Source: Octopus bimaculoides (taxonomy: Eukaryota). From it: a stretch of DNA of 50,631 nt. Position 1 is the stretch's first letter. Each line of letters opens with the position of its first letter. Shown here piece after piece: positions 1,373 through 50,631 of the stretch. The notes below the pieces were generated by a model that saw only the letters and a program-made list of their open reading frames with translations, ran no database searches and was not told the DNA's origin. Made by a program: the position numbers and the translations under genes. The stretch lies in NCBI RefSeq assembly GCF_001194135.2, contig NC_068981.1, forward strand, positions 133,894,684 to 133,945,314, given 5' to 3'.

Positions 1373-1375
1373 TAT

Positions 1376-1476
1376 AAAATATAGAATGCTTTGCAAATCT
1401 GCATGTCAACCTTGCGCAGGGACCCATGCTAATCTTCTCTGTACTTTTCCAGTTTTAGAATATGTACTACTGTAGC
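1376..1476 (-). pseudogene. U6: U6 snRNA retropseudogene (lacks first ~6 nt)
   Basis: rc reads GCTACAGTAGTACATATTCTAAAACTGGAAAAGTACAGAGAAGATTAGCATGGGTCCCTGCGCAAGGTTGACATGCAGATTTGCAAAGCATTCTATATTTT, about 83% identical by hand to the U6 genes at 47127+; no upstream U6 promoter. Confidence 0.92.
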
Positions 1477-1631: not shown

Positions 1632-1861
1632 CCCACATACACATAAGCTTTGAATATGCAACATATGTAATATACAACTCACTTTATATTCCTTATCTAT
1701 CTATCTATCTATCTATCTATCTCTCTTTGTCTTTTTATCTATCTATTTAATTATCTATTTCTCCTCCATTTGATTTGAATTTTACTAAATCTGTGTTTGT
1801 GTTTATCAAAGGATTTCAGTTCAATGATCTAAAACTTCTTTCTGCTGTCTATCTTTATCAG

Positions 1862-2029
1862 TATGTTGATCTAAAGAATGCTTACCTATGTGGCTATCTG
1901 AAAATCAAAGGGCTTACAGAAGAATATCCAATACTTACAACATTTTTCGACGGTGAAATCATCAGTGAAAAGCATCCATTTTTAACTCGTAAGTGGGATG
2001 CTGATGAAGATGTGGACAGGAAACACTGG
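1862..2029 (+). CDS. GID4: GID4 internal coding exon (168 nt, phase 0/0)
   Basis: CAG acceptor ending 1861, GTATGT donor at 2030. Encodes [56 protein letters not shown], nearly identical to the vertebrate GID4 segment as I recall it. Confidence 0.96.
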
Positions 2030-2040
2030 GTATGTAAAAT

Positions 2041-2098
<58 letters not shown>
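2041..2098. repeat. (CT)n(AT)n compound microsatellite
   Basis: Directly visible. Confidence 0.95.
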
Positions 2099-2099
<1 letters not shown>

Positions 2100-2716
2100 C
2101 TCTTTCTGTTGAGATAACAACATGATTTGGATTTCTAATGACCTTATCAGTAAAGCATAAAATTGAAACATAGCCATACTTACCTCCCTTACTTATCAAG
2201 AAAATGATGTTTAATTGATGATTGATACTGCTTTTTCCTTGCTGAATATGTTAAGCTTTTTAAATATGTTTACACTAACTTAATTAGAATTAAATAGTAT
2301 AAAGACAATGATAATAATGTCAGGAAGATTTTTTTTTTCCTATCATCATCTAAGAATGATATCCTCAGGGAAATTAGTGGAAACTTAGAACATTCAGTCA
2401 AGGATGAAAGTATCATCATCATCATCATTTTACATCTAGTTTTCCATATTGGCTCAATTAGGCAAGTTGACAAACCAGAATAGTTCTTATTTGGAGTCAC
2501 TGCTTTAATATGTGTGTGTGTGTGTATCCATGCGCACATATGTGTGTAACTGAGTTTTCAGTATATCCATAAGTTTCATAGGTGTAAAGCTCTCCTGAGA
2601 TATAATCATCTCTCCTCCTCCTCCTCAAACATCCCCCCACCACCACCACCACTTAATCAAGAGGACCTTCCTCTTTCCCTTGTTCCCCCCCCCCATTTCC
2701 CTTTCCTTGTCCTTTC

Positions 2717-2953: not shown

Positions 2954-3431
2954 TATGCCACTTTTTACCTCTTTCTGATTCTACCTGATCATTCCCATCC
3001 TCCCTTCTAAAATGTGAGTAGTCTTGTAGTTCCTCTTAACCCTTTACCTACCAGTGATCTCATATGAGATCACTTAAAAATTACAAATTTCGTAATTATC
3101 TGTCAATATTTACACATATCTAACCTTTTTGCTATATCTACTAGGTATATTTCTCTGATATTCAAATGAGGTTTGCTAATTTTTCACCCAATATCTCACT
3201 TATTTCTATTTAAAATGTTATTTTGATCATTCCTGCGTGTTTCTAAGACTGTTTTATGCTAGAAATCAAAGTTTCATAAAAAAAAATTCCAGTTAATAGA
3301 ATTATGGGAGGTAATGGGCTAAGCAAGAAACCTACTAGACCTAGTACATGAGTAAAAAGTCTAATACAGTCCCTATTCATGCCCTGAATATAATATATGA
3401 TTAAATTATTGTTATTTCTCTCTTTTCACAG

Positions 3432-3533
3432 GGGAAATTTTTATCATTTTTTAAATTAGCAAAAAGTTTTAATTCCGACACATTTGACTATGATGAACTT
3501 CAAAAGACAGATTGTGTATTTATGCGGTGGAAG
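3432..3533 (+). CDS. GID4: GID4 internal coding exon (102 nt, phase 0/0)
   Basis: TTTTCACAG acceptor, GTAAGT donor at 3534. Encodes [34 protein letters not shown]. Confidence 0.96.
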
Positions 3534-3576
3534 GTAAGTTATTCCAAATGCTACATGTAGCCATGCCTTTCTACTT

Positions 3577-7287: not shown

Positions 7288-7801
7288 CAGGTGTGACTGT
7301 GTAGTTAAGAAACTTGCTTCCCAACCATATGGTCTTGGGTTCTGTCCCACTGTGTGGCACTTTGGGCAAGTGCCTTCTACTATAACTCCTTGCCAACTAA
7401 AGCTTTGTGAAAGGATTTAGTTGACTGAAAGAAGACCATCATATCGTGATGGCACCTGTGCCCAGTGTCGCCTTTCTAGCACTTGTGCCGGTGGCACGTG
7501 TAAAGACTTTCGAGCGAGATCGTTGCCAGTGCCGCTGGACTAGCTCTTGTGCAGGTGGCACGTAAAATACACCATTTTGAGTGTGGCCATTGCCAGTACC
7601 GCCTGACTGGCCTTCATGCCAGTGGCACGTAAAAACACCCACTACACTCTCAGAATGGTTGGCGTTAGGAAGGGCATCCAGCTGTAGAAATTCTGCCAAA
7701 TCAGATTGGAGCCTGGTGTAGCCATCTGGTTCACCAGTCCTCAATCAAATCGTCCAACCCATGCTAGCATGGAAAGCAGACGTTAAACGATGATGATGAT
7801 A
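7288..7801 (+). mobile_element. Family-A head (7288-7435) joined to a family-B body and RTE-like tail (7438-7801)
   Basis: tRNA-like head; body matches 20310-20660; ends GACGTTAAACGATGATGATGAT. Confidence 0.85.
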
Positions 7802-9975: not shown

Positions 9976-12900
9976 TGGATTGAGGGTCACTCTGTATATT
10001 CTTAAGAAATTTGTCAATGCTTCATTGTTACTTAATTCATTTTTCGCTTTTCTTAATGCTCTCTTAAAAGTGTCCACAAATCTTTCTACCTGCCTGTTTG
10101 ACCTGGGGTGGTAGTGTGGAGTGAAAATATGCTTTATCACATGCCTCTTACAGTTCTTGAATTCATACCCAGAGAACTGCGCTGTTGTCTGAAACTAATG
10201 TGTCAAGGACATTATATTACGCAAACAATTCATATCAGACTTTATAGTTGTCTTAGAGGTTGGTCTATAGCGCCTGCAAACCTCTAAGCCACTTAGTACA
10301 GCTATTTACTATGATTAAGTAGTAAGCGTCGTTTACCGGTCCGGCATAGTCAATGTGTAACCTAGACCATGGGTTCTCTGTCTCTGGCCATGATTAATAT
10401 TTTACCAGCAGGGCTTTGGCTACGAGTGCACAGCCTTGGCATGTTCTCATCAAGTTTTCAATATCTTGGTCCATAGACAGCCAATAGACATAACTACTCA
10501 TCAGAGCCTTCATCCTTGCCATTCCTGGATGTCTGCTGTAAAATTGTTGCAGTACATCTTTTGTAGTTAGAACCACCACTCTTTGGGCATACATCAGAAT
10601 ATTATCACAAATTGAAAACCTGCTGTCATCTGAATTTTTATTTTGTTAATTTTTTTAAAGCTTCTTTCATTTTCATAATATACTCATCACCTACAGCTTT
10701 CATTCTTATATCCTGTGCAGTCACTGGTAGTTCTTGGATAATCTTCATCATAACACTTTTAATTTCACTTTCTGCCTGCAGTGCAGCTATAATAAGTCTC
10801 TTCTAGTAGTTCCATATTTTTTGGAATTGACTGATTTTTTTTTTCAATGGAATGTATTGCATTTTGAAATTATAGTTCAGTAATATTACACCCCAACATT
10901 GCAGGCAGTTCACAGTATGAGTTGGTAACCCTTTTTTAGACCCATAAATCAACAGCAAAGGTCTATGGTCTATTTGCAATAAAAAAATTTCAGCCATGCA
11001 GAAACCTGTGAAATTTTTTAACAGCAAAAATAATTGCTAAGGCCTCCTTTTCAATTTTACTATATCTCTTCTCTGCAGCTATTAGCAAGCGCAAAACATG
11101 AACCACTGGTTTTGTACTTCCGTCTTCATATTTATGAAGTAGAACAGCACCTAATCCATGCTCAGAAGCATCAGACACTACAATGATGTCCATTTCGAGA
11201 TGATAATGTGCTAACAACAGGTCTGAGATGAGAATTTTTTTTATTTCTTCAAAAGTGGCATTTACTCCTTTTTTTAATAAGTCATTCAATGGAGCTCTTA
11301 ACTTGTGCATATTAGGAATGTAATTTTGGTTGTAGTTTGCCAGCCCAAGAAATGCTTGTAAAGTTGGAATATTTGTCAGCGCAGGCATATTCCTTATTGC
11401 ATCTACCCTTGATGGGTCAGGACGTCTACCACTTTTATCAATTATTTGCCCTATGTACTTAATTTAGGGTAGAAAGAATTCGCATTTTTCTTCACTCAAA
11501 GTGAATCCAAAAACTTTAGTTCCACATGCTGTTCGCGAGAATTACTCTTGATCAAAATATCGTCCAAGTATGGGATTGCAAATTCACAATCAGATAGCAN
11601 NNNNNNNNNCAATCCTCTGTGTGTATTTATTGTCAAATACTTTGAGCATTTTTCATTTACTTCTCTCTGTAAATAGGCTTCAGACAGATCTAATTTGGGA
11701 AAAAATTTTCCACCATTTAGCTTTGAAAAAATGTCCTCTGCAGTTGGGGTGGATGGTGGTATGTTTTTAAGCAGTTGTTCAATTCTGTAGAGAAATCAGC
11801 ACACTGCCTTTTTTTTTTTTTTTTTTAATACATACCGTGGGTGCTGCCCACTTTGAGTAACCCACCTTTTTGATGACTCCACTCTTTTTGAGTCTGTCCA
11901 ACTCTTCATTTACGGTTTGAATTGCCCCAAATGGCACTTTTCTGTTTGCTTTAAATACAGGTACAGCGCTTTCACTTACTTGGAAATAGGCTTCTGTCTT
12001 TCTACAGCATTTTATTTCACTTTTTTTCTTCAGTTCTTCCAAAGACTTGTTTTTAACGGGACAACTATTTATGTTATTGCAGTAAAGGTTTATGGGGCGA
12101 TACCAAAAATCAAATAGTTCTAACCAATCTATGCCAAACAGATGGATTGTATTATCCACAATGAATAATTATGCTTCGCTGTCTCTCCTTGAAATGTGAC
12201 ATCGATACATGTTTTGCCCATGAAATGTAATTTATCACCCATTACACCACACACTATTTTTGCTGTTTTACGTAATCTTGGTTTACCAGTTTCCTTCCAA
12301 GTATCCACATTTATAATCAAGATGTCACTACCTAATTTGGTATTCACATCATTTATTTTTATGAGCATAAGTCTTCTTGTTTTTCCATTGCAATCACTCT
12401 CTGCTGAAAACACCTTAGAACTTTTTGTGTTTGAGTCTCATAGTCTTGTTCTACAATGAGAACTCCTGTGTCTCCCAGCTTCTGACAACTGTAGCACTTT
12501 TTGTTTTTAAACGGGCAATCCTTTTTGTAGTATAGTCCTCCACAACCATAATACAGATTAGGGCCTGACACATTTTTTTATTGTACTTTCCGGGACAACA
12601 CATTTGAATTTTTGCAGAGTCTTTATCTTGTATCTTTTTCACATCATGTTTAAGATTTACCATAGTCTGACATTCTTCTGCAGTGGTTTATAGAGATAAA
12701 TCCTGGTTCTCTTGCTCCATTTTTGAGAGAATCCTTGCCTGAATTTCTTTATTTTCGAGTGCTATAAGTCCTTGCACAAAGATAAGTGATTTGAACTTAT
12801 CCTGAGTGAGAACCTGAAGTTTGAAATTTTCACACATACGGTTCACTACACCAGCATAGGTGATAAAATCATCCTCCTGATTCTTTATTAAGTTCCAACA

Positions 12901-13779: not shown

Positions 13780-13916
13780 TTGATAAGAGATCAGGAGATG
13801 ACTGGTATGGGTGGGAGGATGAGAGATATACAGAGGCAGAGATAGAGAGGTAGAGAGAGAGAGAGATTTTTATTAATATCTCTTTGTTATATTTATGTTT
13901 GTCTGTCTGTCTGCAG

Positions 13917-14047
13917 GAACACTTCTTAGTGCCAAACCACAAGATTACAGACATAAATGGAGCATCATTTGCTGGATTTTACTACATCTGCTTCTGGAAA
14001 TCTAATTCTACCATTGAAGGTTATTATTATCACCGAAGTTCTGAATG
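13917..14047 (+). CDS. GID4: GID4 internal coding exon (131 nt, phase 0/2)
   Basis: CTGCAG acceptor, GTAAGT donor at 14048. Encodes [43 protein letters not shown] plus TG of Trp. Confidence 0.97.
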
Positions 14048-14709
14048 GTAAGTTGATATCCTTACAGTTTATTTTTAAATCAGATCAATTCTAACAATAT
14101 TTATGCTTTGTTTGAAATTCATCTTCTTCTTCTTCTTCCCTCATCCAACATCTTAGTTTTGTATATCACAATATCATCAAGTTAATACATTCTCAGTTTA
14201 TATTTTATGCAAAACATAAGAATTGAAGTAAATGTAACAGTGTGGATGTTTTAGCTGTGAGGGAAAATAATAACAATATAAACACATTACCTTTTATGCT
14301 TTTGATGTGCAGATAAAAGAGGTGAGGGAGACACATGATAAGCTGTTTCCTTCAGCTAGTCAGTAGCAATAGAATAGTTACCTGTTATAAAAAGAAGTCA
14401 TAAATCTAGTTATAACCATACTGGATAGCTTAATTTGCATATTTTTGCTTATAACTGCTCATCATTAATTAAACAATGTATATTTTAGGTATATAGGTGC
14501 ANNNNNNNNNNNNNNNNNNNNNNNNNNNNNNNNNNNNNNNNNNNNNNNNNNNNNNNNNNNNNNNNNNNNNNNNNNNNNNNNNNNNNNNNNNNNNNNNNNN
14601 NNNNNNNNNNNNNNNNNNNNNNNNNNNNNNNNNNNNNNNNNNNNNNNNNNNNNNNNNNNNNNNNNNNNNNNNNNNNNNNNNNNNNNNNNNNNNNNNNNNN
14701 NNNNNNNNN

Positions 14710-15236: not shown

Positions 15237-15707
15237 TTAAATGGCACAAAATATCAACTGCAGTTGTAGACCCTATCAATCGAGCTGTTGTATGGTATAG
15301 CTGACAAACCAGAGGTCTCTGCCAAGCTCCAGTATGGTTTCTACTGCAGGATGCCTTTCCTTGCACCAACCACCGGACTGAACGTACTGGACGCTTTTTA
15401 CATGGCACCAGCACCAGTGAGGTCACCAAGTAACTTACAAAATAAGACACCCCGCCATCCTTTCAATTGAGGGAGGTGGCTTTGTGCCAGGTGATGAGAG
15501 ATATGATAGAGGAACAAAAACAGATGTCTTGCTGTAGAGGAGATCCATTAGTATGAATAATTTTGACAGCTAAAATAAGGTTTTGTTAACTGAAGATGTA
15601 AAATGACTATATTTACTCCATTTAATACCACTTTATTTATATTTCCTATCAATAACATTCTTTCTTTATTTCTGCATTATTTTATTTTTTTTTGTTTTTT
15701 GTTTTAG

Positions 15708-15771
15708 GTACCAGTCCTTAAAACTGGAACACGTCAGTGAACAGAGCGCCCCTGTCTATGCATTCCGATGA
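15708..15771 (+). CDS. GID4: GID4 terminal coding exon
   Basis: Poly-T tract plus TAG acceptor; the first G completes Trp; encodes YQSLKLEHVSEQSAPVYAFR then TGA at 15769-15771. Confidence 0.96.
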
Positions 15772-20309: not shown

Positions 20310-20660
20310 GAAACCATCAATGGCACCTGTGCCCAGCATCGCCTTCCTGGCACGTGTAAAGACTTTTGAGCGAGATCATTGCCGGTGCCGCCGAACTGGC
20401 TCTTGTGCCGGTGGCACGTAAAATACACCATTTTGAGCATGGCCATTGCCAGTACCACCTGACTGGCCTTCGTGCTGGTGGCACGTAAAAGCACCCACTA
20501 CACTCTGAGTGGTTGGTGTTAGGAAGGGCATCCAGCTGTAGAAATCAGATTGGAGCCTGGTGTAGCCATCTGGTCTCACCAGTCCTCAGTCAAATCGTCC
20601 AACCCATGCTAGCATGGAAAGCGGACGTTAAACGACAATGATGATGATGATGATGATGAT
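20310..20660 (+). mobile_element. SINE family B body with RTE-like tail
   Basis: Near-identical to 7438-7801; ends GGACGTTAAACGACAATGATGATG. Confidence 0.9.
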
Positions 20661-27275: not shown

Positions 27276-27437
27276 CATCATCATCATCATCGTTTAACGT
27301 CCGCTTTCCATGCTAGCATGGGTTGGACGATTTGACTGAGGACTGGTGAAACCGGATGGCTACACCAGGCTCCAATCTGATTTGGCAGAGTTTCTACAGC
27401 TGGATGCCCTTCCTAATGCCAACCACTCTGAGAGTAT
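27276..27437 (-). mobile_element. SINE family B, young short copy
   Basis: Near-identical to 32930-33089; flanked by AGCAAT direct repeats (27270-27275 and 27438-27443). Confidence 0.9.
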
Positions 27438-27479
27438 AGCAATGACCATGGAAATACTTATTGAAAAGGCATAACAAAG

Positions 27480-28085
27480 CTGCATTTCAATGATGAACCA
27501 AAAACTTCAATCTAGGAGAAAGAAGAGAACCCACTGTGTTAACATGATTTTGAATTTGATCAAGTGATTTAAGACTCAAAGAAGGTGCCAACTCAAAGAT
27601 GACAGCAGCATTCAATACAAGGTCAAATGGTGGCCTTATAGAGATACATCATACTCTCAAGCATAAGAAATTTGCAAGCATGGAGGAGAGATCCAACCTT
27701 TTTGGAAGCTGACATAGTGATTGACCAAGCAAATTTATTCCAAAAGAAACCCCTAGTCAAAGTCAAGAGGTCAGATATTGAAACTTTCTGGTAGGTCAAC
27801 CCTGCTAGCAATCGGAGAAAGAAATGGCTACCTATGATGATTAATTGACATACACTTTGTCTTGCCTGCATTAAAATTCATCAGCTAGTCATTATCCCTC
27901 TCCATAATTATGCAAAGATCATTCCCAAGAAAGACAGGTTGATCAAGACTGCTAATTTTATCATGACAAGAGTAAACAGCAGTATCATCAGAATAGATGG
28001 TGAATCTAGAAATATGATCTGAAAGTTCCTTAATGAAAAGGAGGAAAAGAATAGGAGCAAGTACAGAACCTTGAGACACTCCTGC
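27480..28085 (-). mobile_element. CR1/L2-group LINE reverse transcriptase fragment, degenerate
   Basis: SQGSVLAPILFLLFIKEL...IYSDDTAVY (PQGSVLGP and YADD motifs) and KVGSL...YLYKATI. Confidence 0.82.
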
Positions 28086-30515: not shown

Positions 30516-31477
30516 CCTCCCCAGCTCTCCATTCTGTGAATTAACCCTAGCTGCTGATTTTAACACCCAAAACCATTTTTATACTGTGACATTTGCTTGA
30601 CTTCTTTTGCAAAAATGTTCGTCTTTGTTAATTATTATTTGCAAGGCATGAATGTCACTCGGTCTCATTCCTCCCCGACTCTCCTTTATCCAAAGCATTT
30701 TCTACACAAGTAAGAAATTATTTATGATCAAACACATGCTCTCTCTTTGTTGCACACACATATGAAATATCTCTCACATATGAAATATCTCTCACATACA
30801 CGCACATACAATCTCTCATGCATTCACACACATATACAAGCTCTCTTACATACATACACACACACATATACAATCTCCCTTACACACACATATACAATCT
30901 CATATACATAAACATGCAATCTCTGTCATATACACATATATACTATTTCTCTAACATACACATACACATACATACATTCACTATCCCTTTTGTAGTTACA
31001 AATACACACATAAATCCTTTGTGTCTACATACTAAACACACAGGTAACAAATCAAAATTTCTACTGTTATATACACAGTTGTAAAAGACAATTTCTGCTA
31101 ATTTTGTTCCTGCTTCTTTTCCTCTTACTTGTGTTCATATTTTGATTCAGTTTTGGTTTACAGAGTGGGAGAGAAATAGCTTAGATTTTTTTTCGTTTTA
31201 TTTAGAATCGCAGTTAATGGGATGAAATTTTAACCTTTTATTGTTTACATTCTGTTTTTAAGATTTAAGTCAGAGGAAAATCTCAAATTCTTATAGGGCT
31301 GGAGATTCTTAACTGTTTGTGGGGTAGGGGAAAGAGTTACCATGGAGCTTCTTTGATTTACTGAATATTTTCATAAACCACCACTTGAGCATAGAAATCA
31401 ATGAACTTACATCCAAAATGAAATGAAACTAATTCAGTTAAACATCAAATTATGCAAACAATTAACAAAACAATTAA

Positions 31478-31711
31478 CCCTTTGCCTATCCAAAGCATTT
31501 TCATAAGTTTGTTCTAAATGTCCATGCTTGATTTCAGACTTTTAGTTAGCCCTTATTTCACACATTCTAAGTAATATAAAGCTTTCCTTTCATAAATCCT
31601 GAGTTATTCTGGTGGTTTAAAAGAAGTTGGGGATGTGTATCATATACGATGCATGGATTCCAGGGAAATATGTCTTGTGTGTCACACGTGAGATACAGGT
31701 CAGGCAAAGGG
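31478..31711. mobile_element. piggyBac-type MITE family 2
   Basis: TTAA|CCCTTTGCCT...AGGCAAAGGG|TTAA; internal sequence is unlike family 1. Confidence 0.78.
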
Positions 31712-32581
31712 TTAAAATATGCAAATGCGTAAATACATACCGACAAACTCTAATATTTAACACTACTGTAATATGTGGTAGATGGTTTTTGTCAAGGACC
31801 ATTTATGGTCCAGAGGTCACCCCGTTTGGAAGCACTGTTATAGGAAATTGTGAAATGTCCTTTATTTATTAGTTGCTGAGAGATGTTAGATATTAAATGA
31901 TTTTGATAGGAAGTTGCCTAAAGAAGCTGGTGGGAAAAGCTCTTCAGGAGATTTTAGGCAAGCCATTTTTGGATGATTCTTATTATGCAGGATCATATTT
32001 TTTTTTTTTTTTTAATGATATTCATCCTTTTCATTAATATTAATTTATTTTCGTGCTAAGGTTATTTTAAATAATACATTTATTTGTATACATTAAATGT
32101 AAATGTTGACATAGATACAATTTAAACAGAAAATGGTAGGGACAAGTTGAACATCAAGTGGAACCTTGTTTTGTTTGAAGTTCTTTGTTGTTTTGGGTTG
32201 TTTTTTTAAGTGAGGTGCAGTAACACAATATCTATCTATATCCATGTTTACATTTAGTAATCTACAAATTAGATTATTCATTTTTATTGAAATGATGTTG
32301 GATTATTTAACCATTTCACATTACCCTCTCCTAACACAAAACATTTGTTCCCCAAACTACCTTCTCCTCTCCTAGTTCCAGTTATATGGTAAATAGTGAG
32401 GAAAAAATTATCATGGCAGATACAAAAAATAATAATGAATTTATTAATAGTAATAAATTGTATTGTTTTACAACATGTTTTTTTTTGTATTTTTATGAAA
32501 TAAAATTTGTAAAAGATTATGAAATGCATAGTATAATCCACGGTGCATTTTACATTATATATATATATATATAGTTGTGTG

Positions 32582-32746
32582 CAAGCATATTTAACCTGTT
32601 TGTGTATATTCAGATGTGGAAAGACAATACCCTGCACAAGTTGTTTCAAGATATTGCCTATAAGAAGAATTTCTTCTCTCAAGACATCTTGTGCAGTGTA
32701 TTGTCTTTCTATGTCTGAGTGTATATGAACATGTTAAATATTCCTG
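32582..32746 (+). other. 70-bp-arm inverted repeat with 25-nt loop (long RNA-hairpin candidate)
   Basis: Arms 32582-32651 and 32677-32746; hand pairing gives 54 Watson-Crick, 9 G.U and 7 true mismatches. Confidence 0.85.
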
Positions 32747-32929
32747 TACATAACTATACTTCATTCAAGACTGCTTAGTGCACAACTTATAAATATATAA
32801 GTACATACATACATATGTTTGTATGTATGTATGTATGTATGTATGCATGTGTGTATGTATTTGTGAATATCTCTATATGTATGTATATATATATATATAT
32901 GACATCAAGCAAGGTGAAAGTGTTGTAAT

Positions 32930-33089
32930 CATCATCATCATCGTTTAACGTCCGCTTTCCATGCTAGCATGGGTTGGACGATTTGACTGAGGACTGGTGA
33001 AACCGGATGGCAACACCAGGCTCCAATCTAATTTGGCAGAGTTTCTACAGCTGGATGCCCTTCCTAACGCCAACCACTCAGAGAGTGTA
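32930..33089 (-). mobile_element. SINE family B, young short copy
   Basis: Near-identical to 27276-27437; GTAAT direct repeats at 32925-32929 and 33090-33094. Confidence 0.9.
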
Positions 33090-33334
33090 GTAATGGCTAC
33101 CTAAAAATTTTAAACATACACGTTGCTATCTTCAATATTCTTTTTTTATTTTATTTTGTGTTAATAGGTAGCAGAATTCATTCCACCTCTCTGCGTTCAA
33201 ATTCCACCAAGGTCATCTTTGCTGATAATTTTTTTCAGGACTGATAAACAATGTACCAGTCCAAGGCAGCTGATTGGCGGACTTGTTAATATTATTAAAG
33301 CAAAATATCTTCCAATATCTGTTCCAGTTAATGT

Positions 33335-33540
33335 GTCAAACTGACAGAGTCGTTAGCATGCCAGACAAAATACTTAGCAGCATTTTGCTCATCTTTACAT
33401 TCTGAGTTCAAATACCACTGAGGTTGGCTTTGCCTTTCTTCCTTTTGGGGTCAGTAAAATAAGTACCAGTTGAGTGTTGCAGTTGATGTAATCAACTTAC
33501 CCTCTCTCCTGAAATTACTTGTACCAAAATTTGAAACCAA
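33335..33540 (+). mobile_element. SINE family C
   Basis: Head GAGTCGTTAGCATGCCAGAC...GAGTTCAAATACC; core GCCTTTCTTCCTTTTGGGGTCAGTAAAATAAGTACCAG. Confidence 0.82.
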
Positions 33541-35972: not shown

Positions 35973-36235
35973 GAAAACAAAGATGAAAATATTGTGTTAC
36001 TTAACATGATCCTAGAATATTTCAGGAAAAATATCCTTTTTCAAATACAAGAAGTAAAATAACCAAAGTCTGGAGAAATGTGTTGCTGTTAGCAGCAAGC
36101 CATCCTAGTGGTTCACCAATAAGAACACATTTCTCCAGGCTTAGATTATTTTCCTTCTTTTATTTGAAAAGGAGTATTTTTCCCAAAATATTATGGGATC
36201 ATGCAAAGTAATACAATACTTTTATCTTTGCTTTT
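35973..36235. repeat. Decayed foldback/MITE-like inverted repeat (arms ~110 bp, 39-bp spacer)
   Basis: Arms about 35973-36084 and 36124-36235, with a perfect 15-bp core CTGGAGAAATGTGTT/AACACATTTCTCCAG. Confidence 0.8.
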
Positions 36236-48897: not shown

Positions 48898-49153
48898 GGT
48901 ACTACTAAAGCAGCGCGGACCCGATCGCTCAGTCGCGCGACAGGGCTAGCTAGTCGTGAGTGGTCGATCCTAACCCTAACCCTATTCCTAACCCTAAACA
49001 CGTATTCATTTGCACACGCGGGTTAGGGTTAGGGATAGGGTTAGGGACAGGGTTAGGGTTAGGGGATAGGGTTAGGGTTAGGATCGACCACTCAAGACTA
49101 GCTAGCGCGGACGCGCGACTGCGCGTTCGGGTCCGCGCTGCTTTAGTAGTACC
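48898..49153. mobile_element. 256-bp non-autonomous long-TIR element (Mutator/foldback-like) with inverted telomere-like repeats
   Basis: About 100-bp TIRs starting GG; exact 9-bp TSD CAAAAGTGC (48889-48897 and 49154-49162); empty sites at 47407-47415 and 50545-50553; (CCCTAA)-like tract 48969-48997 and (TTAGGG)-like tract 49020-49082. Confidence 0.95.
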
Positions 49154-50186
49154 CAAAAGTGCTTTTACAAGTATCTTTGCTTCCATTAAATTCCAAGTAC
49201 ATGTACTTCAATATTTTTCAAAATAAACAGAGAAAAAGTTATAATAACATTTAAAACAGAAAAAACCCCAGCGATTTCACAATATCGGGTTTCCCATACC
49301 AATTTTTTAACTCCGTTTTTAATTTCACGGTTAAAATTGTTAATATTTTTTCCTCAATTTGTTAATTTTTAAAAGTTATCCCCTCCCCTATTTCCATTCG
49401 GACTCTAAACTTGTCGTTCACCTTCGCATGCGTGTATGAAGATTTTGCAATCAACTAGACGATAGCCGGGCCACACTTCATGTGGTCGTTCGATAAGCTA
49501 GAAACAAGAATCAATTCTCCTTGAAAGCACGTTTTTCTAACGACTTATATATAAAACGAAAGATACATCGGACATATATATAGTCCAAGAGAGATTCTTT
49601 CGATTTGTGATACAAACATGAAAGTGGAAATAATAACGATATTTAGCAACGACCAATCAAACGTGTTCAATATCATGTTTCGTTTTTTCATAATTTCCTC
49701 GGATTCTAATATTTTCAACAACACTACAAATATGTAGTGAGAATTTATTGTATTTCTGTTTTGGTAAAGCTTCATCATGGAAGCCCTTTATTAAAGGCAT
49801 TCATTCAATGAAACGTGTACACTTGTTTCAGTTGTGTACTCTACACTACATTATGACATGAGGTATTGTTGAAATAAAAGTGAAATATTGCAGTATTTCC
49901 TAGATGTGATGGACTTCATATGTACTCAATCGTTGGCTTTTTTCATGAAGCGTTCACACTGGGATAGTTTTGACAATTTTAAAGAGCCTGTCTTGCGCCT
50001 AATTTGAATCATCAGCGGTCTTCCAATAAAAAAAAAATACACCGAGCGAAATATGCATTTGCGTACAAAACACATGATTTTCAAAGATTTAATGCAAACA
50101 GATATGATATGGACAATCGTAACTAGGAATGAAAAATATGATAAACACCTTCTAGAATTTACTATATCATTATTATTATTACAAAT

Positions 50187-50264
50187 ATGCAAATGAGGCA
50201 GCCTATTATGGGTAAGTGTACGAGATAGGGTATGTATATATTACGAAGCTTAGTAAACGCTATT
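50187..50264 (+). promoter_or_regulatory. U6 copy 3 promoter
   Basis: ATGCAAAT at 50187-50194, TATATAT at 50235-50241; ATTTGCGT at 50057 (-208). Confidence 0.8.
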
Positions 50265-50288
50265 GTACTAGCTACGGCGGTACATATT

Positions 50289-50321
<33 letters not shown>

Positions 50322-50372
50322 GGCCCCTGCGCAAGGATGACACGCAAATTCGTGAAGCGTTCCATATTTTTT
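50265..50372 (+). ncRNA. U6: U6 snRNA gene, copy 3
   Basis: Identical to copies 1 and 2. Confidence 0.98.
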
Positions 50373-50631
50373 CTTACTATTTCTACTGACATGGATATCC
50401 ATTTTTTTCTTGTTGTCATTCTCTTCTATTCCATGAAATTTATTCGTATCTTCCGTAACTTTCAGAAATTTCATCTAAAACTGTATAGTTCCAGTGAATA
50501 TATACAGAAATTGGTGAGCGTAACGAATTCCTGCGCAAGCCTTTCAAAAGTGCTTTTATAAGTTTTTTTGATTCCATTAAATTTTAAGTACAAGTACTTC
50601 AATGTTTTTTTTAAATAAATAGAGAAGAAGA

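What the first reader, a model, noticed from the sequence alone, without database searches (positions are those of the whole stretch)
32582..32746. 165-nt hairpin whose arm differences are mostly G.U wobbles on the + strand
Seen: 70-bp arms with a 25-nt loop. In the central 60 bp all 9 transition differences give G.U pairs on the + strand and none give A.C; the 3 A.C/C.A mismatches lie at the ends. A neutrally decaying DNA palindrome should give both kinds about equally, as the 35973 repeat appears to. It lies about 80 bp past the AATAAA of the candidate gene. Known: coleoids have many lineage-specific miRNAs and heavy ADAR editing. Inference: a strand-specific selected RNA structure (pri-miRNA, hairpin siRNA precursor or editing substrate). 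Alternative: a TTAA-bounded MITE, since TTAA occurs near both outer ends.
Basis: partly seen in the sequence, partly recalled or inferred. Interest (0 to 1): 0.7.

Follow-up and report, generated by a model that had tools for sequence, protein, structure and literature searches.

The report
Decaying palindrome with marginal G.U skew
A real ~190-base inverted repeat sits in repeat-rich non-coding DNA; its one-strand excess of G.U "wobble" mismatches is only borderline significant, so it is most likely an ordinary decaying palindromic element, not a proven RNA gene.

Summary
The hairpin is real and longer than reported. The arms are 32570-32651 and 32677-32758 (82 nt, 78% complementary) with a 25-nt spacer. 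Read on the + strand, the arm differences are 11 G.U, 3 A.C and 4 transversions.

The + strand RNA folds far better than the - strand. The skew itself is borderline:
- Binomial p = 0.057.
- p = 0.065 after merging CpG-type double sites.
- Fisher p = 0.039 against six other inverted repeats in the window, which pool to 34 G.U : 40 A.C.
- Two-sided p = 0.013 by folding energy over all 2,048 polarity assignments.

Eight of the G.U pairs lie in two TG/TA-type tracts, where changes may not be independent.

No Rfam family matches, and the stem is twice the length of a canonical pri-miRNA stem. There is no second copy in the window and no coding gene nearby. The nearest gene is GID4, whose stop codon lies 16.8 kb upstream. 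The inverted repeat runs 21 bp beyond both TTAA sites, so a TTAA-bounded MITE is rejected.

Copy number, orthologs and expression could not be tested, because no close relative of the source genome is in any collection on hand. Best reading: a neutral palindromic relic (about 0.6). A selected RNA hairpin remains possible (about 0.2).

The parts
32570..32651 (.). Left arm of the inverted repeat (82 nt).
   Evidence: the repeat finder pair I1; pair table.
32652..32676 (.). 25-nt spacer or loop, TATTGCCTATAAGAAGAATTTCTTC. It contains a small off-centre sub-hairpin, GAAGA-ATT-TCTTC.
32677..32758 (.). Right arm of the inverted repeat (82 nt).
32601..32618 (+). Left-arm tract TGTGTATATTCAGATGTG, which holds 8 of the 11 G.U mismatches. 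It pairs with 32710-32727 (TATGTCTGAGTGTATATG). Both arms read GTGTATAT on the + strand.
   Evidence: Pair table and sequence contexts.
32710..32727 (+). Right-arm partner of the G.U-rich tract.
32619..32640 (+). Best-preserved 22 nt of the left arm, GAAAGACAATACCCTGCACAAG. It pairs 21/22 with 32688-32709. This is the only place a miRNA-like duplex could sit, but a window this clean is not unusual (permutation p = 0.22).
32688..32709 (+). Best-preserved 22 nt of the right arm, CTTGTGCAGTGTATTGTCTTTC.
32556..32573 (.). (TA)9 microsatellite that abuts and overlaps the outer end of the left arm. It makes any 'TA' target-site duplication unreadable.
32591..32594 (.). Internal TTAA. It pairs with the TTAA at 32734-32737. 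Arm complementarity continues 21 bp outside it.
32734..32737 (.). Internal TTAA, partner of 32591-32594.
32499..32504 (+). The hexamer occurs 1.17 times per kb on this strand.

Best explanation
This is a roughly 189-bp near-palindrome. It is either the relic of a foldback or MITE-like DNA element, or a local inverted duplication. It lies in non-coding, microsatellite- and SINE-rich DNA 16.8 kb downstream of the GID4 stop codon.

The two arms were once (near-)identical inverted copies. They have since drifted apart by ordinary point mutation. The transition-to-transversion ratio is 14:4, the same as in the other inverted repeats of the window. Part of the change is CpG decay: three paired dinucleotide sites read TG/TG, TG/TG and CA/CA.

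The excess of G.U over A.C on the + strand is a moderate sampling fluctuation. It is inflated by clustered, possibly non-independent changes in two TG/TA-type tracts. It is not a signature of selection on an RNA.

Shown: the structure, the mismatch spectrum, the absence of coding sequence and of any known RNA family, and balanced spectra in the control repeats. Inferred: neutrality and a transposon or duplication origin.
For: - The inverted repeat and its mismatch table are established.
- Its transition:transversion ratio of 14:4 matches the control inverted repeats: 13:5, 17:3, 25:9 and 13:4.
- The window is strongly CpG-depleted (observed/expected 0.35, TpG 1.25, CpA 1.30) and no CpG is left in the hairpin. 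Six of the 14 transition mismatches sit in three paired dinucleotide sites, TG/TG twice and CA/CA once, as expected from CpG decay in both arms.
- The skew is weak by count: p = 0.057, or 0.065 for 9:2 events.
- Tight palindromes are common here, three in 50 kb (32570, 35974, 48898), so one skewed example is unremarkable.
- No Rfam family reaches gathering score. The sub-threshold hits on the hairpin are generic ones: MIR2599 at 32 bits against 120, and let-7 at 26 bits against 53.5, the latter on both strands.
- There is no recognisable coding exon in 29.2-34.3 kb. SINE copies start 170 bp downstream.
- The 22-bp clean duplex is not significant (p = 0.22).
Against: - The energy-based polarity test is nominally significant. 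Only 0.7% of the 2,048 polarity assignments fold as well on the + strand, two-sided 1.3%.
- The Fisher test against the control repeats gives p = 0.039.
- The three A.C mismatches sit where they cost least, at the base and next to the loop.
- No second copy was found that would prove a transposon origin.
- The target-site duplication is unreadable.
Confidence: 0.6

Rival explanations
1. The hairpin is a + strand transcript element under selection to stay double-stranded. Candidates are a young, palindrome-derived miRNA or hairpin-siRNA precursor, or an ADAR substrate. Mutations that give G.U are tolerated in the RNA, while those that give A.C are purged from the stem core.
For: - G.U: A.C is 11:3, against 34:40 in the control repeats (Fisher p = 0.039).
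- The observed polarity is within the best 0.7% for + strand folding energy.
- The + strand is 20-28 kcal/mol more stable than the - strand, whereas the control hairpins differ by 1-5 kcal/mol.
- A 21/22 duplex at 32619-32640 / 32688-32709 has miRNA-duplex length.
- MITE-derived miRNA hairpins are a documented route, for example Made1 giving rise to mir-548 (PMC1784062, listed).
Against: - The p-values are borderline and the pattern was selected by eye.
- Eight of the 11 G.U pairs lie in two TG/TA-type tracts.
- Seven destabilising mismatches remain (3 A.C and 4 transversions).
- A continuous 70-82 bp stem is about twice the length of a canonical animal pri-miRNA stem.
- No Rfam family reaches threshold.
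- No gene or promoter was identified. AATAAA is frequent by chance.
- There is no evidence of expression or conservation.
Confidence: 0.2
2. The skew is mutational rather than selective. The region is transcribed or replicated asymmetrically, so C>T and A>G accumulate preferentially on the + strand. That automatically produces G.T rather than A.C in any palindrome.
For: - The + strand just upstream (31550-32300) has G>C (GC skew +0.19 to +0.26) and T>A (AT skew -0.10 to -0.16).
- All 11 G.U sites are compatible with + strand C>T or A>G changes.
Against: - Skew over the hairpin itself is near zero (GC skew -0.07 to +0.08).
- The palindrome 3.2 kb downstream is balanced, 6:7.
- From general knowledge, known transcription-coupled asymmetries are modest. 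They are well under two-fold and partly of opposite sign for C>T, which is far from the roughly four-fold needed here.
Confidence: 0.12
3. The element is a TTAA-bounded (piggyBac-type) MITE, as the first reader proposed as an alternative.
For: TTAA occurs at 32591 and 32734, symmetrically in the two arms. PiggyBac and MITE families are reported in an octopus repeat annotation (PMC13282606).
Against: - The arms stay complementary for 21 bp outside both TTAA sites, 16 of 21 pairs. Flanks of an insertion should not do this.
- The sequence inside the TTAA sites does not start with the CCC...GGG ends typical of piggyBac (general knowledge).
- No other copy was found.
Confidence: 0.03

Closest known systems
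MITEs and foldback-type palindromic DNA elements (for example human Made1, a mariner-derived MITE)
   Same: It is short (189 bp), AT-rich (67%) and non-coding. It is almost entirely made of two inverted arms with a short spacer, and folds into a very stable hairpin. It sits among other transposon relics. Its outer ends are TA-flanked, as in Tc1/mariner-type elements.
   Different: - No second copy was seen.
- The TA flank merges with a (TA)9 microsatellite, so no target-site duplication can be read.
- Similarity of the outer ends to the Hsmar1 end (sequence confirmed present in PMC5714172 and PMC9062482) is weak and confined to one arm (shuffle p = 0.04 for arm 1, 0.85 for arm 2).
- Comparison with two other Tc1/mariner ends written from memory was also not significant.
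Transposon-derived miRNA hairpins (mir-548 from Made1; PMC1784062)
   Same: A palindromic element that would give a long, nearly perfect hairpin if read through by a polymerase. The inner 22-bp duplex has miRNA length.
   Different: - Made1 hairpins are about 80 nt, whereas this one is 165-189 nt with a 70-82 bp stem.
- There is no hit to the mir-548 model or any other miRNA model at threshold.
- There is no expression evidence.
Long hairpin RNA (hpRNA) endo-siRNA loci and ADAR-edited inverted repeats
   Same: A long, near-perfect intramolecular duplex of at least 70 bp is the substrate type used by Dicer for endo-siRNAs and by ADAR for hyper-editing (general knowledge).
   Different: Neither transcription, small RNAs nor editing can be checked here. 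Described hpRNA arms are usually several hundred base pairs long.

Membership tests
Canonical animal miRNA precursor | Imperfect hairpin with a roughly 22-nt duplex of at least 16 paired positions. | tested here: met
   32619-32640 pairs 21/22 with 32688-32709. Such a clean window is expected by chance (p = 0.22).
Canonical animal miRNA precursor | Pri-miRNA stem of about three helical turns (about 35 bp) between the basal and apical single-stranded junctions. | tested here: not met
   The predicted stem is continuous over 70-82 bp, with a further imperfect ~10-bp upper stem and a 25-nt loop.
Canonical animal miRNA precursor | Match to a described miRNA family. | tested here: not met
   Rfam 15 has no match at gathering score. 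The best hits on the hairpin are MIR2599 (32 bits against 120) and let-7 (26 bits against 53.5). Lineage-specific MirGeneDB entries could not be compared, because the supplements of PMC9699675 hold no miRNA sequences.
Canonical animal miRNA precursor | Small-RNA reads from both arms with 2-nt 3' overhangs. | not testable with these tools
   No read data are available.
Canonical animal miRNA precursor | Conservation of the hairpin in related species. | not testable with these tools
   No close relative of the source genome is in the collections. The nearest loci align only over the GID4 exon, at 81-84%.
MITE | Terminal inverted repeats. | tested here: met
   82-nt arms, 78% complementary.
MITE | Small size and no coding capacity. 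| tested here: met
   The element is 189 bp. ORFs across it have no homolog.
MITE | Target-site duplication flanking the inverted repeats. | tested here: inconclusive
   The ends read TA|TAGTT...AACTA|TA, but the left flank is a (TA)9 microsatellite. TTAA is internal, so it cannot be the duplication.
MITE | Multiple dispersed copies in the genome. | not testable with these tools
   - There are 0 further copies in the 50.6-kb window, while SINE families recur 8-11 times.
- The source genome is not available.
- Scans of metagenome and prokaryote collections gave only chance matches.
hpRNA / ADAR substrate | Transcribed long intramolecular dsRNA. | not testable with these tools
   The structure would qualify if transcribed. 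There are no transcription data.

The most novel reading that the evidence does not exclude
The palindrome is a lineage-specific, + strand-expressed hairpin, caught at an early stage of domestication from an inverted repeat. It would be a young miRNA or endo-siRNA precursor, or a dedicated ADAR substrate. In this reading selection already filters arm mutations, so that only wobble-compatible changes survive in the stem core.
Probability: 0.15. Interest if true: 0.5.

Novelty: new member of a known kind. Interest (0 to 1): 0.25.

Why it matters
If the skew were real selection, this would be a single-sequence signature of a newly born structured RNA. It would also suggest a cheap way to screen genomes for such births, by testing the polarity of transition mismatches in palindromes. 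As the evidence stands, it is one borderline case among common palindromic relics. Its main value is as a worked control: in this window the polarity statistic is balanced in six other inverted repeats and skewed in one.

Tried and rejected
1. Protein-space search for other copies or orthologs. The 132-aa ORF over the left arm, a six-frame concatenate of the hairpin and the 61-aa + ORF were searched against the large protein collections. There were no hits. This is uninformative, because the collections lack close relatives of this genome.

2. DNA pattern scans with the conserved arm core. The JGI metagenome scan gave 2 hits, both unrelated coding sequence. The prokaryote genome scan gave 31 single hits. 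That is at or below the roughly 70 expected by chance for 17 fixed bases in 596 Gb on both strands (my arithmetic).

3. Rfam, at gathering score and at E <= 10. Only generic sub-threshold hairpin hits were found.

4. Literature.
 - Full-text search for 15-mers of the hairpin found nothing.
 - The supplements of the octopus miRNA paper PMC9699675 contain no miRNA sequences. A let-7 control string was also absent, so this is no test.
 - Search for the neighbouring SINE core found nothing.

5. Mariner-type end. Similarity to the Hsmar1 end is weak and limited to one arm. I dropped it as evidence.

6. TTAA-bounded MITE: rejected, because the inverted repeat continues 21 bp beyond both TTAA sites.

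7. 'Retro-copied, ADAR-hyperedited hairpin' as the source of + strand A>G clusters. I considered this and set it aside. There is no poly(A) tail or other retroposition mark at the ends. The 3' neighbours of the mismatched G are mostly T, not the G that ADAR prefers (the ADAR preference is from general knowledge).

8. A nearby gene end. No Pfam-recognisable exon lies in 29.2-34.3 kb. GID4 ends at about 15770.

Full report
**Observation**

The sequence at 32582-32746 is part of a larger ungapped inverted repeat. The arms are 32570-32651 and 32677-32758, 82 nt each and 78% complementary, separated by 25 nt.

A pair-by-pair table read on the + strand gives 64 Watson-Crick pairs, 11 G.U, 3 A.C and 4 transversion mismatches. 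All nine G.U pairs lie between 32601 and 32645.

The 165-nt + strand RNA folds at -78.1 kcal/mol, against -29.6 +/- 3.6 for shuffles (z = -13.6). The - strand folds at -58.4 (z = -8.8). For the full 189 nt the values are -96.3 and -68.0. The hairpin and the strand difference are therefore real.

**Is the skew more than chance?**

By counts it is borderline. The figure of 9:0 (p = 0.004) holds only for a sub-window chosen after looking.

Six other inverted repeats in the same window serve as controls. Their G.U:A.C counts are 6:7, 8:9, 11:14, 4:9, 2:1 and 3:0, which pool to 34:40. Against these, Fisher's test gives p = 0.039.

I also enumerated all 2,048 ways of assigning polarity to the transition mismatches, treating paired dinucleotide sites as one unit. 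The observed + strand energy is matched or beaten by 0.7% of assignments, two-sided 1.3%. This is the strongest figure. It reflects the A.C pairs lying where they cost least.

Three points weaken the skew:
- Non-independence through CpG decay. The window is strongly CpG-depleted (observed/expected 0.35, TpG 1.25, CpA 1.30) and no CpG remains in the hairpin. Three paired dinucleotide sites read TG/TG (32601-02 with 32726-27), TG/TG (32615-16 with 32712-13) and CA/CA (32647-48 with 32680-81). That is what CpG decay in both arms produces. These sites account for 4 G.U and 2 A.C. Counted as events, the ratio is 9:2 (p = 0.065).
- Clustering. Eight of the 11 G.U pairs lie in 32601-32618, in two TG/TA-type tracts. 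Both arms read GTGTATAT on the + strand there. An alternating purine-pyrimidine tract can only mismatch by transitions, and microsatellite-like tracts can change by slippage, so the effective number of events may be smaller still.
- Selection by eye. The pattern was picked out among three tight palindromes in 50 kb.

The transition-to-transversion ratio of the arms is 14:4. The controls give 13:5, 17:3, 25:9 and 13:4. Only the polarity of the changes is unusual, not their amount or kind.

**Context**

The window carries GID4 (Pfam PF09783) exons on the + strand at about 1.9, 3.4, 13.9 and 15.7 kb. The last coding exon ends at about 15770. The hairpin is therefore 16.8 kb downstream of that stop codon.

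No ORF between 29.2 and 34.3 kb matches a Pfam family. The nearest recognisable coding remnant is a reverse-transcriptase fragment on the - strand at 27888-28079.

The stretch 31000-32927, hairpin included, has no other copy in the window. SINE-like families that start at 32928, 33341 and 34320 recur 8 or more times.

The hairpin is bounded on the left by a (TA)9 microsatellite. It is followed within 40 bp by (TACA)n and (TATG)n runs.

AATAAA at 32499 is one of 57 on this strand, or 1.17 per kb. It does not by itself mark a gene end. Base-composition skew over the hairpin is close to zero. Upstream, at 31.5-32.3 kb, the + strand is moderately G- and T-rich.

**What it is not**

- No Rfam family reaches its gathering score in the hairpin. 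The window's only Rfam matches are four U6 genes. In E-value mode the hairpin gives generic sub-threshold hits: MIR2599 at 32 bits against 120, and let-7 at 26 bits against 53.5, the latter also on the - strand.
- The continuous 70-82 bp stem is about twice the stem length of a canonical animal pri-miRNA (general knowledge). The cleanest 22-bp stretch, 32619-32640 with 32688-32709 at 21/22, is not unusual for this mismatch density (p = 0.22).
- A TTAA-bounded MITE is contradicted. The TTAA sites at 32591 and 32734 are internal, and complementarity continues 21 bp beyond them.
- A mariner-type end was a lead from memory. The Hsmar1 end sequence is confirmed in PMC5714172 and PMC9062482. The similarity is confined to one arm and is weak (p = 0.04 and 0.85).

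**What could not be tested**

Copy number, orthologs, transcription, small RNAs and editing could not be tested.

- ORFs across the hairpin have no relatives in the protein collections.
- Scans of metagenome and prokaryote DNA with the conserved arm core gave only chance matches.
- These negatives carry little weight. The nearest loci in the collections align with the window only over a GID4 exon, at 81-84% nucleotide identity. That means no close relative of this genome is on hand.
- The supplements of the octopus miRNA study PMC9699675 hold names and seed-site k-mers but no miRNA sequences. A let-7 control string was not found either.
- I could not confirm the source organism with the tools.

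**Most likely explanation**

The feature is most likely a neutral palindromic relic, either a foldback or MITE-like element or a local inverted duplication. Its arms have diverged by ordinary transitions, CpG decay included. Their polarity happens to favour the + strand (confidence about 0.6).

If the region is transcribed on the + strand, the RNA would be a long near-perfect duplex. It would then be a natural Dicer or ADAR substrate. Transposon-derived miRNA hairpins are a known precedent (PMC1784062).

The rival reading, real selection on a + strand RNA, keeps about 0.2. This rests on the energy-based test and the contrast with the controls. A mutational strand asymmetry keeps about 0.1.

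**Novelty and verdict**

This is a new instance of a known kind of object. Interest is low to moderate, because the single intriguing property is statistically marginal and every decisive test lies outside the data available here.

Noticed in passing
window 46979-50553 (U6 genes at 47127-47233, 48612-48718 and 50265-50371, + strand) and 1375-1470 (- strand): There is a tandem array of three full-score U6 snRNA genes (113 bits each). The repeat unit is about 1.5-1.65 kb and its flanks are 86-95% identical. A weaker U6 copy (73 bits) lies on the opposite strand at the other end of the window.
   Followed up: partly
window 48898-49153: A tight palindrome (102-nt arms, 88% complementary, 52-nt spacer) lies inside the U6 repeat unit. 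Its outer arms are CpG-rich, and CCCTAA/TTAGGG telomere-like runs sit at its centre. A 48-nt perfect partner of one arm lies at 48313-48360.
   Followed up: no
window 45120-46129: Nested inverted repeats surround the N gap at 45455-45701. One is 130 nt at 100% (45325-45454 / 45784-45913) and the other is 134 nt at 96% (45120-45253 / 45996-46129). This is either a large foldback element or an assembly artefact at the gap.
   Followed up: no
window 35974-36234: This is a second hairpin-type palindrome: 111-nt arms, 84% complementary, 39-nt spacer. Its mismatch polarity is balanced (6 G.U: 7 A.C) and its folding energy is nearly equal on the two strands (-120.8 and -122.0). I used it as a control.
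   Followed up: yes
window 1751-2122, 3405-3557, 13854-14048 and 15607-15768 (+ strand): These are exons of a GID4 / Vac_ImportDeg (PF09783) gene. The last coding exon ends ...SAPVYAFR followed by a stop at about 15770. The best database matches to one exon are 90-95% identical at the protein level, from unnamed ENA and Logan contigs.
   Followed up: partly
window 32928-33095 and at least 8 other places (for example 27277-27444, 7641-7800, 20497-20648): A SINE-like family begins with (CAT)n followed by GTTTAACGTCCGCTTTCCATGCTAGCATGGGTTGGACG. Copies are 72-96% identical. Two further short repeat families start at 33341 and 34320. A literature search for the core sequence found nothing.
   Followed up: partly
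whole window: CpG is strongly depleted (observed/expected 0.35), with matching TpG and CpA excess (1.25 and 1.30), at 36% G+C. There are six N gaps (8748, 11600, 14502, 16011, 28403, 45455), which points to a gapped scaffold assembly.
   Followed up: no
window 10990-12159 (- strand) and 27888-28079 (- strand): These are retroelement coding remnants. One is an RNase H / RT-connection-like ORF pair. The other is an RVT_1 fragment (E = 7e-6, just below the Pfam cut-off).
   Followed up: no
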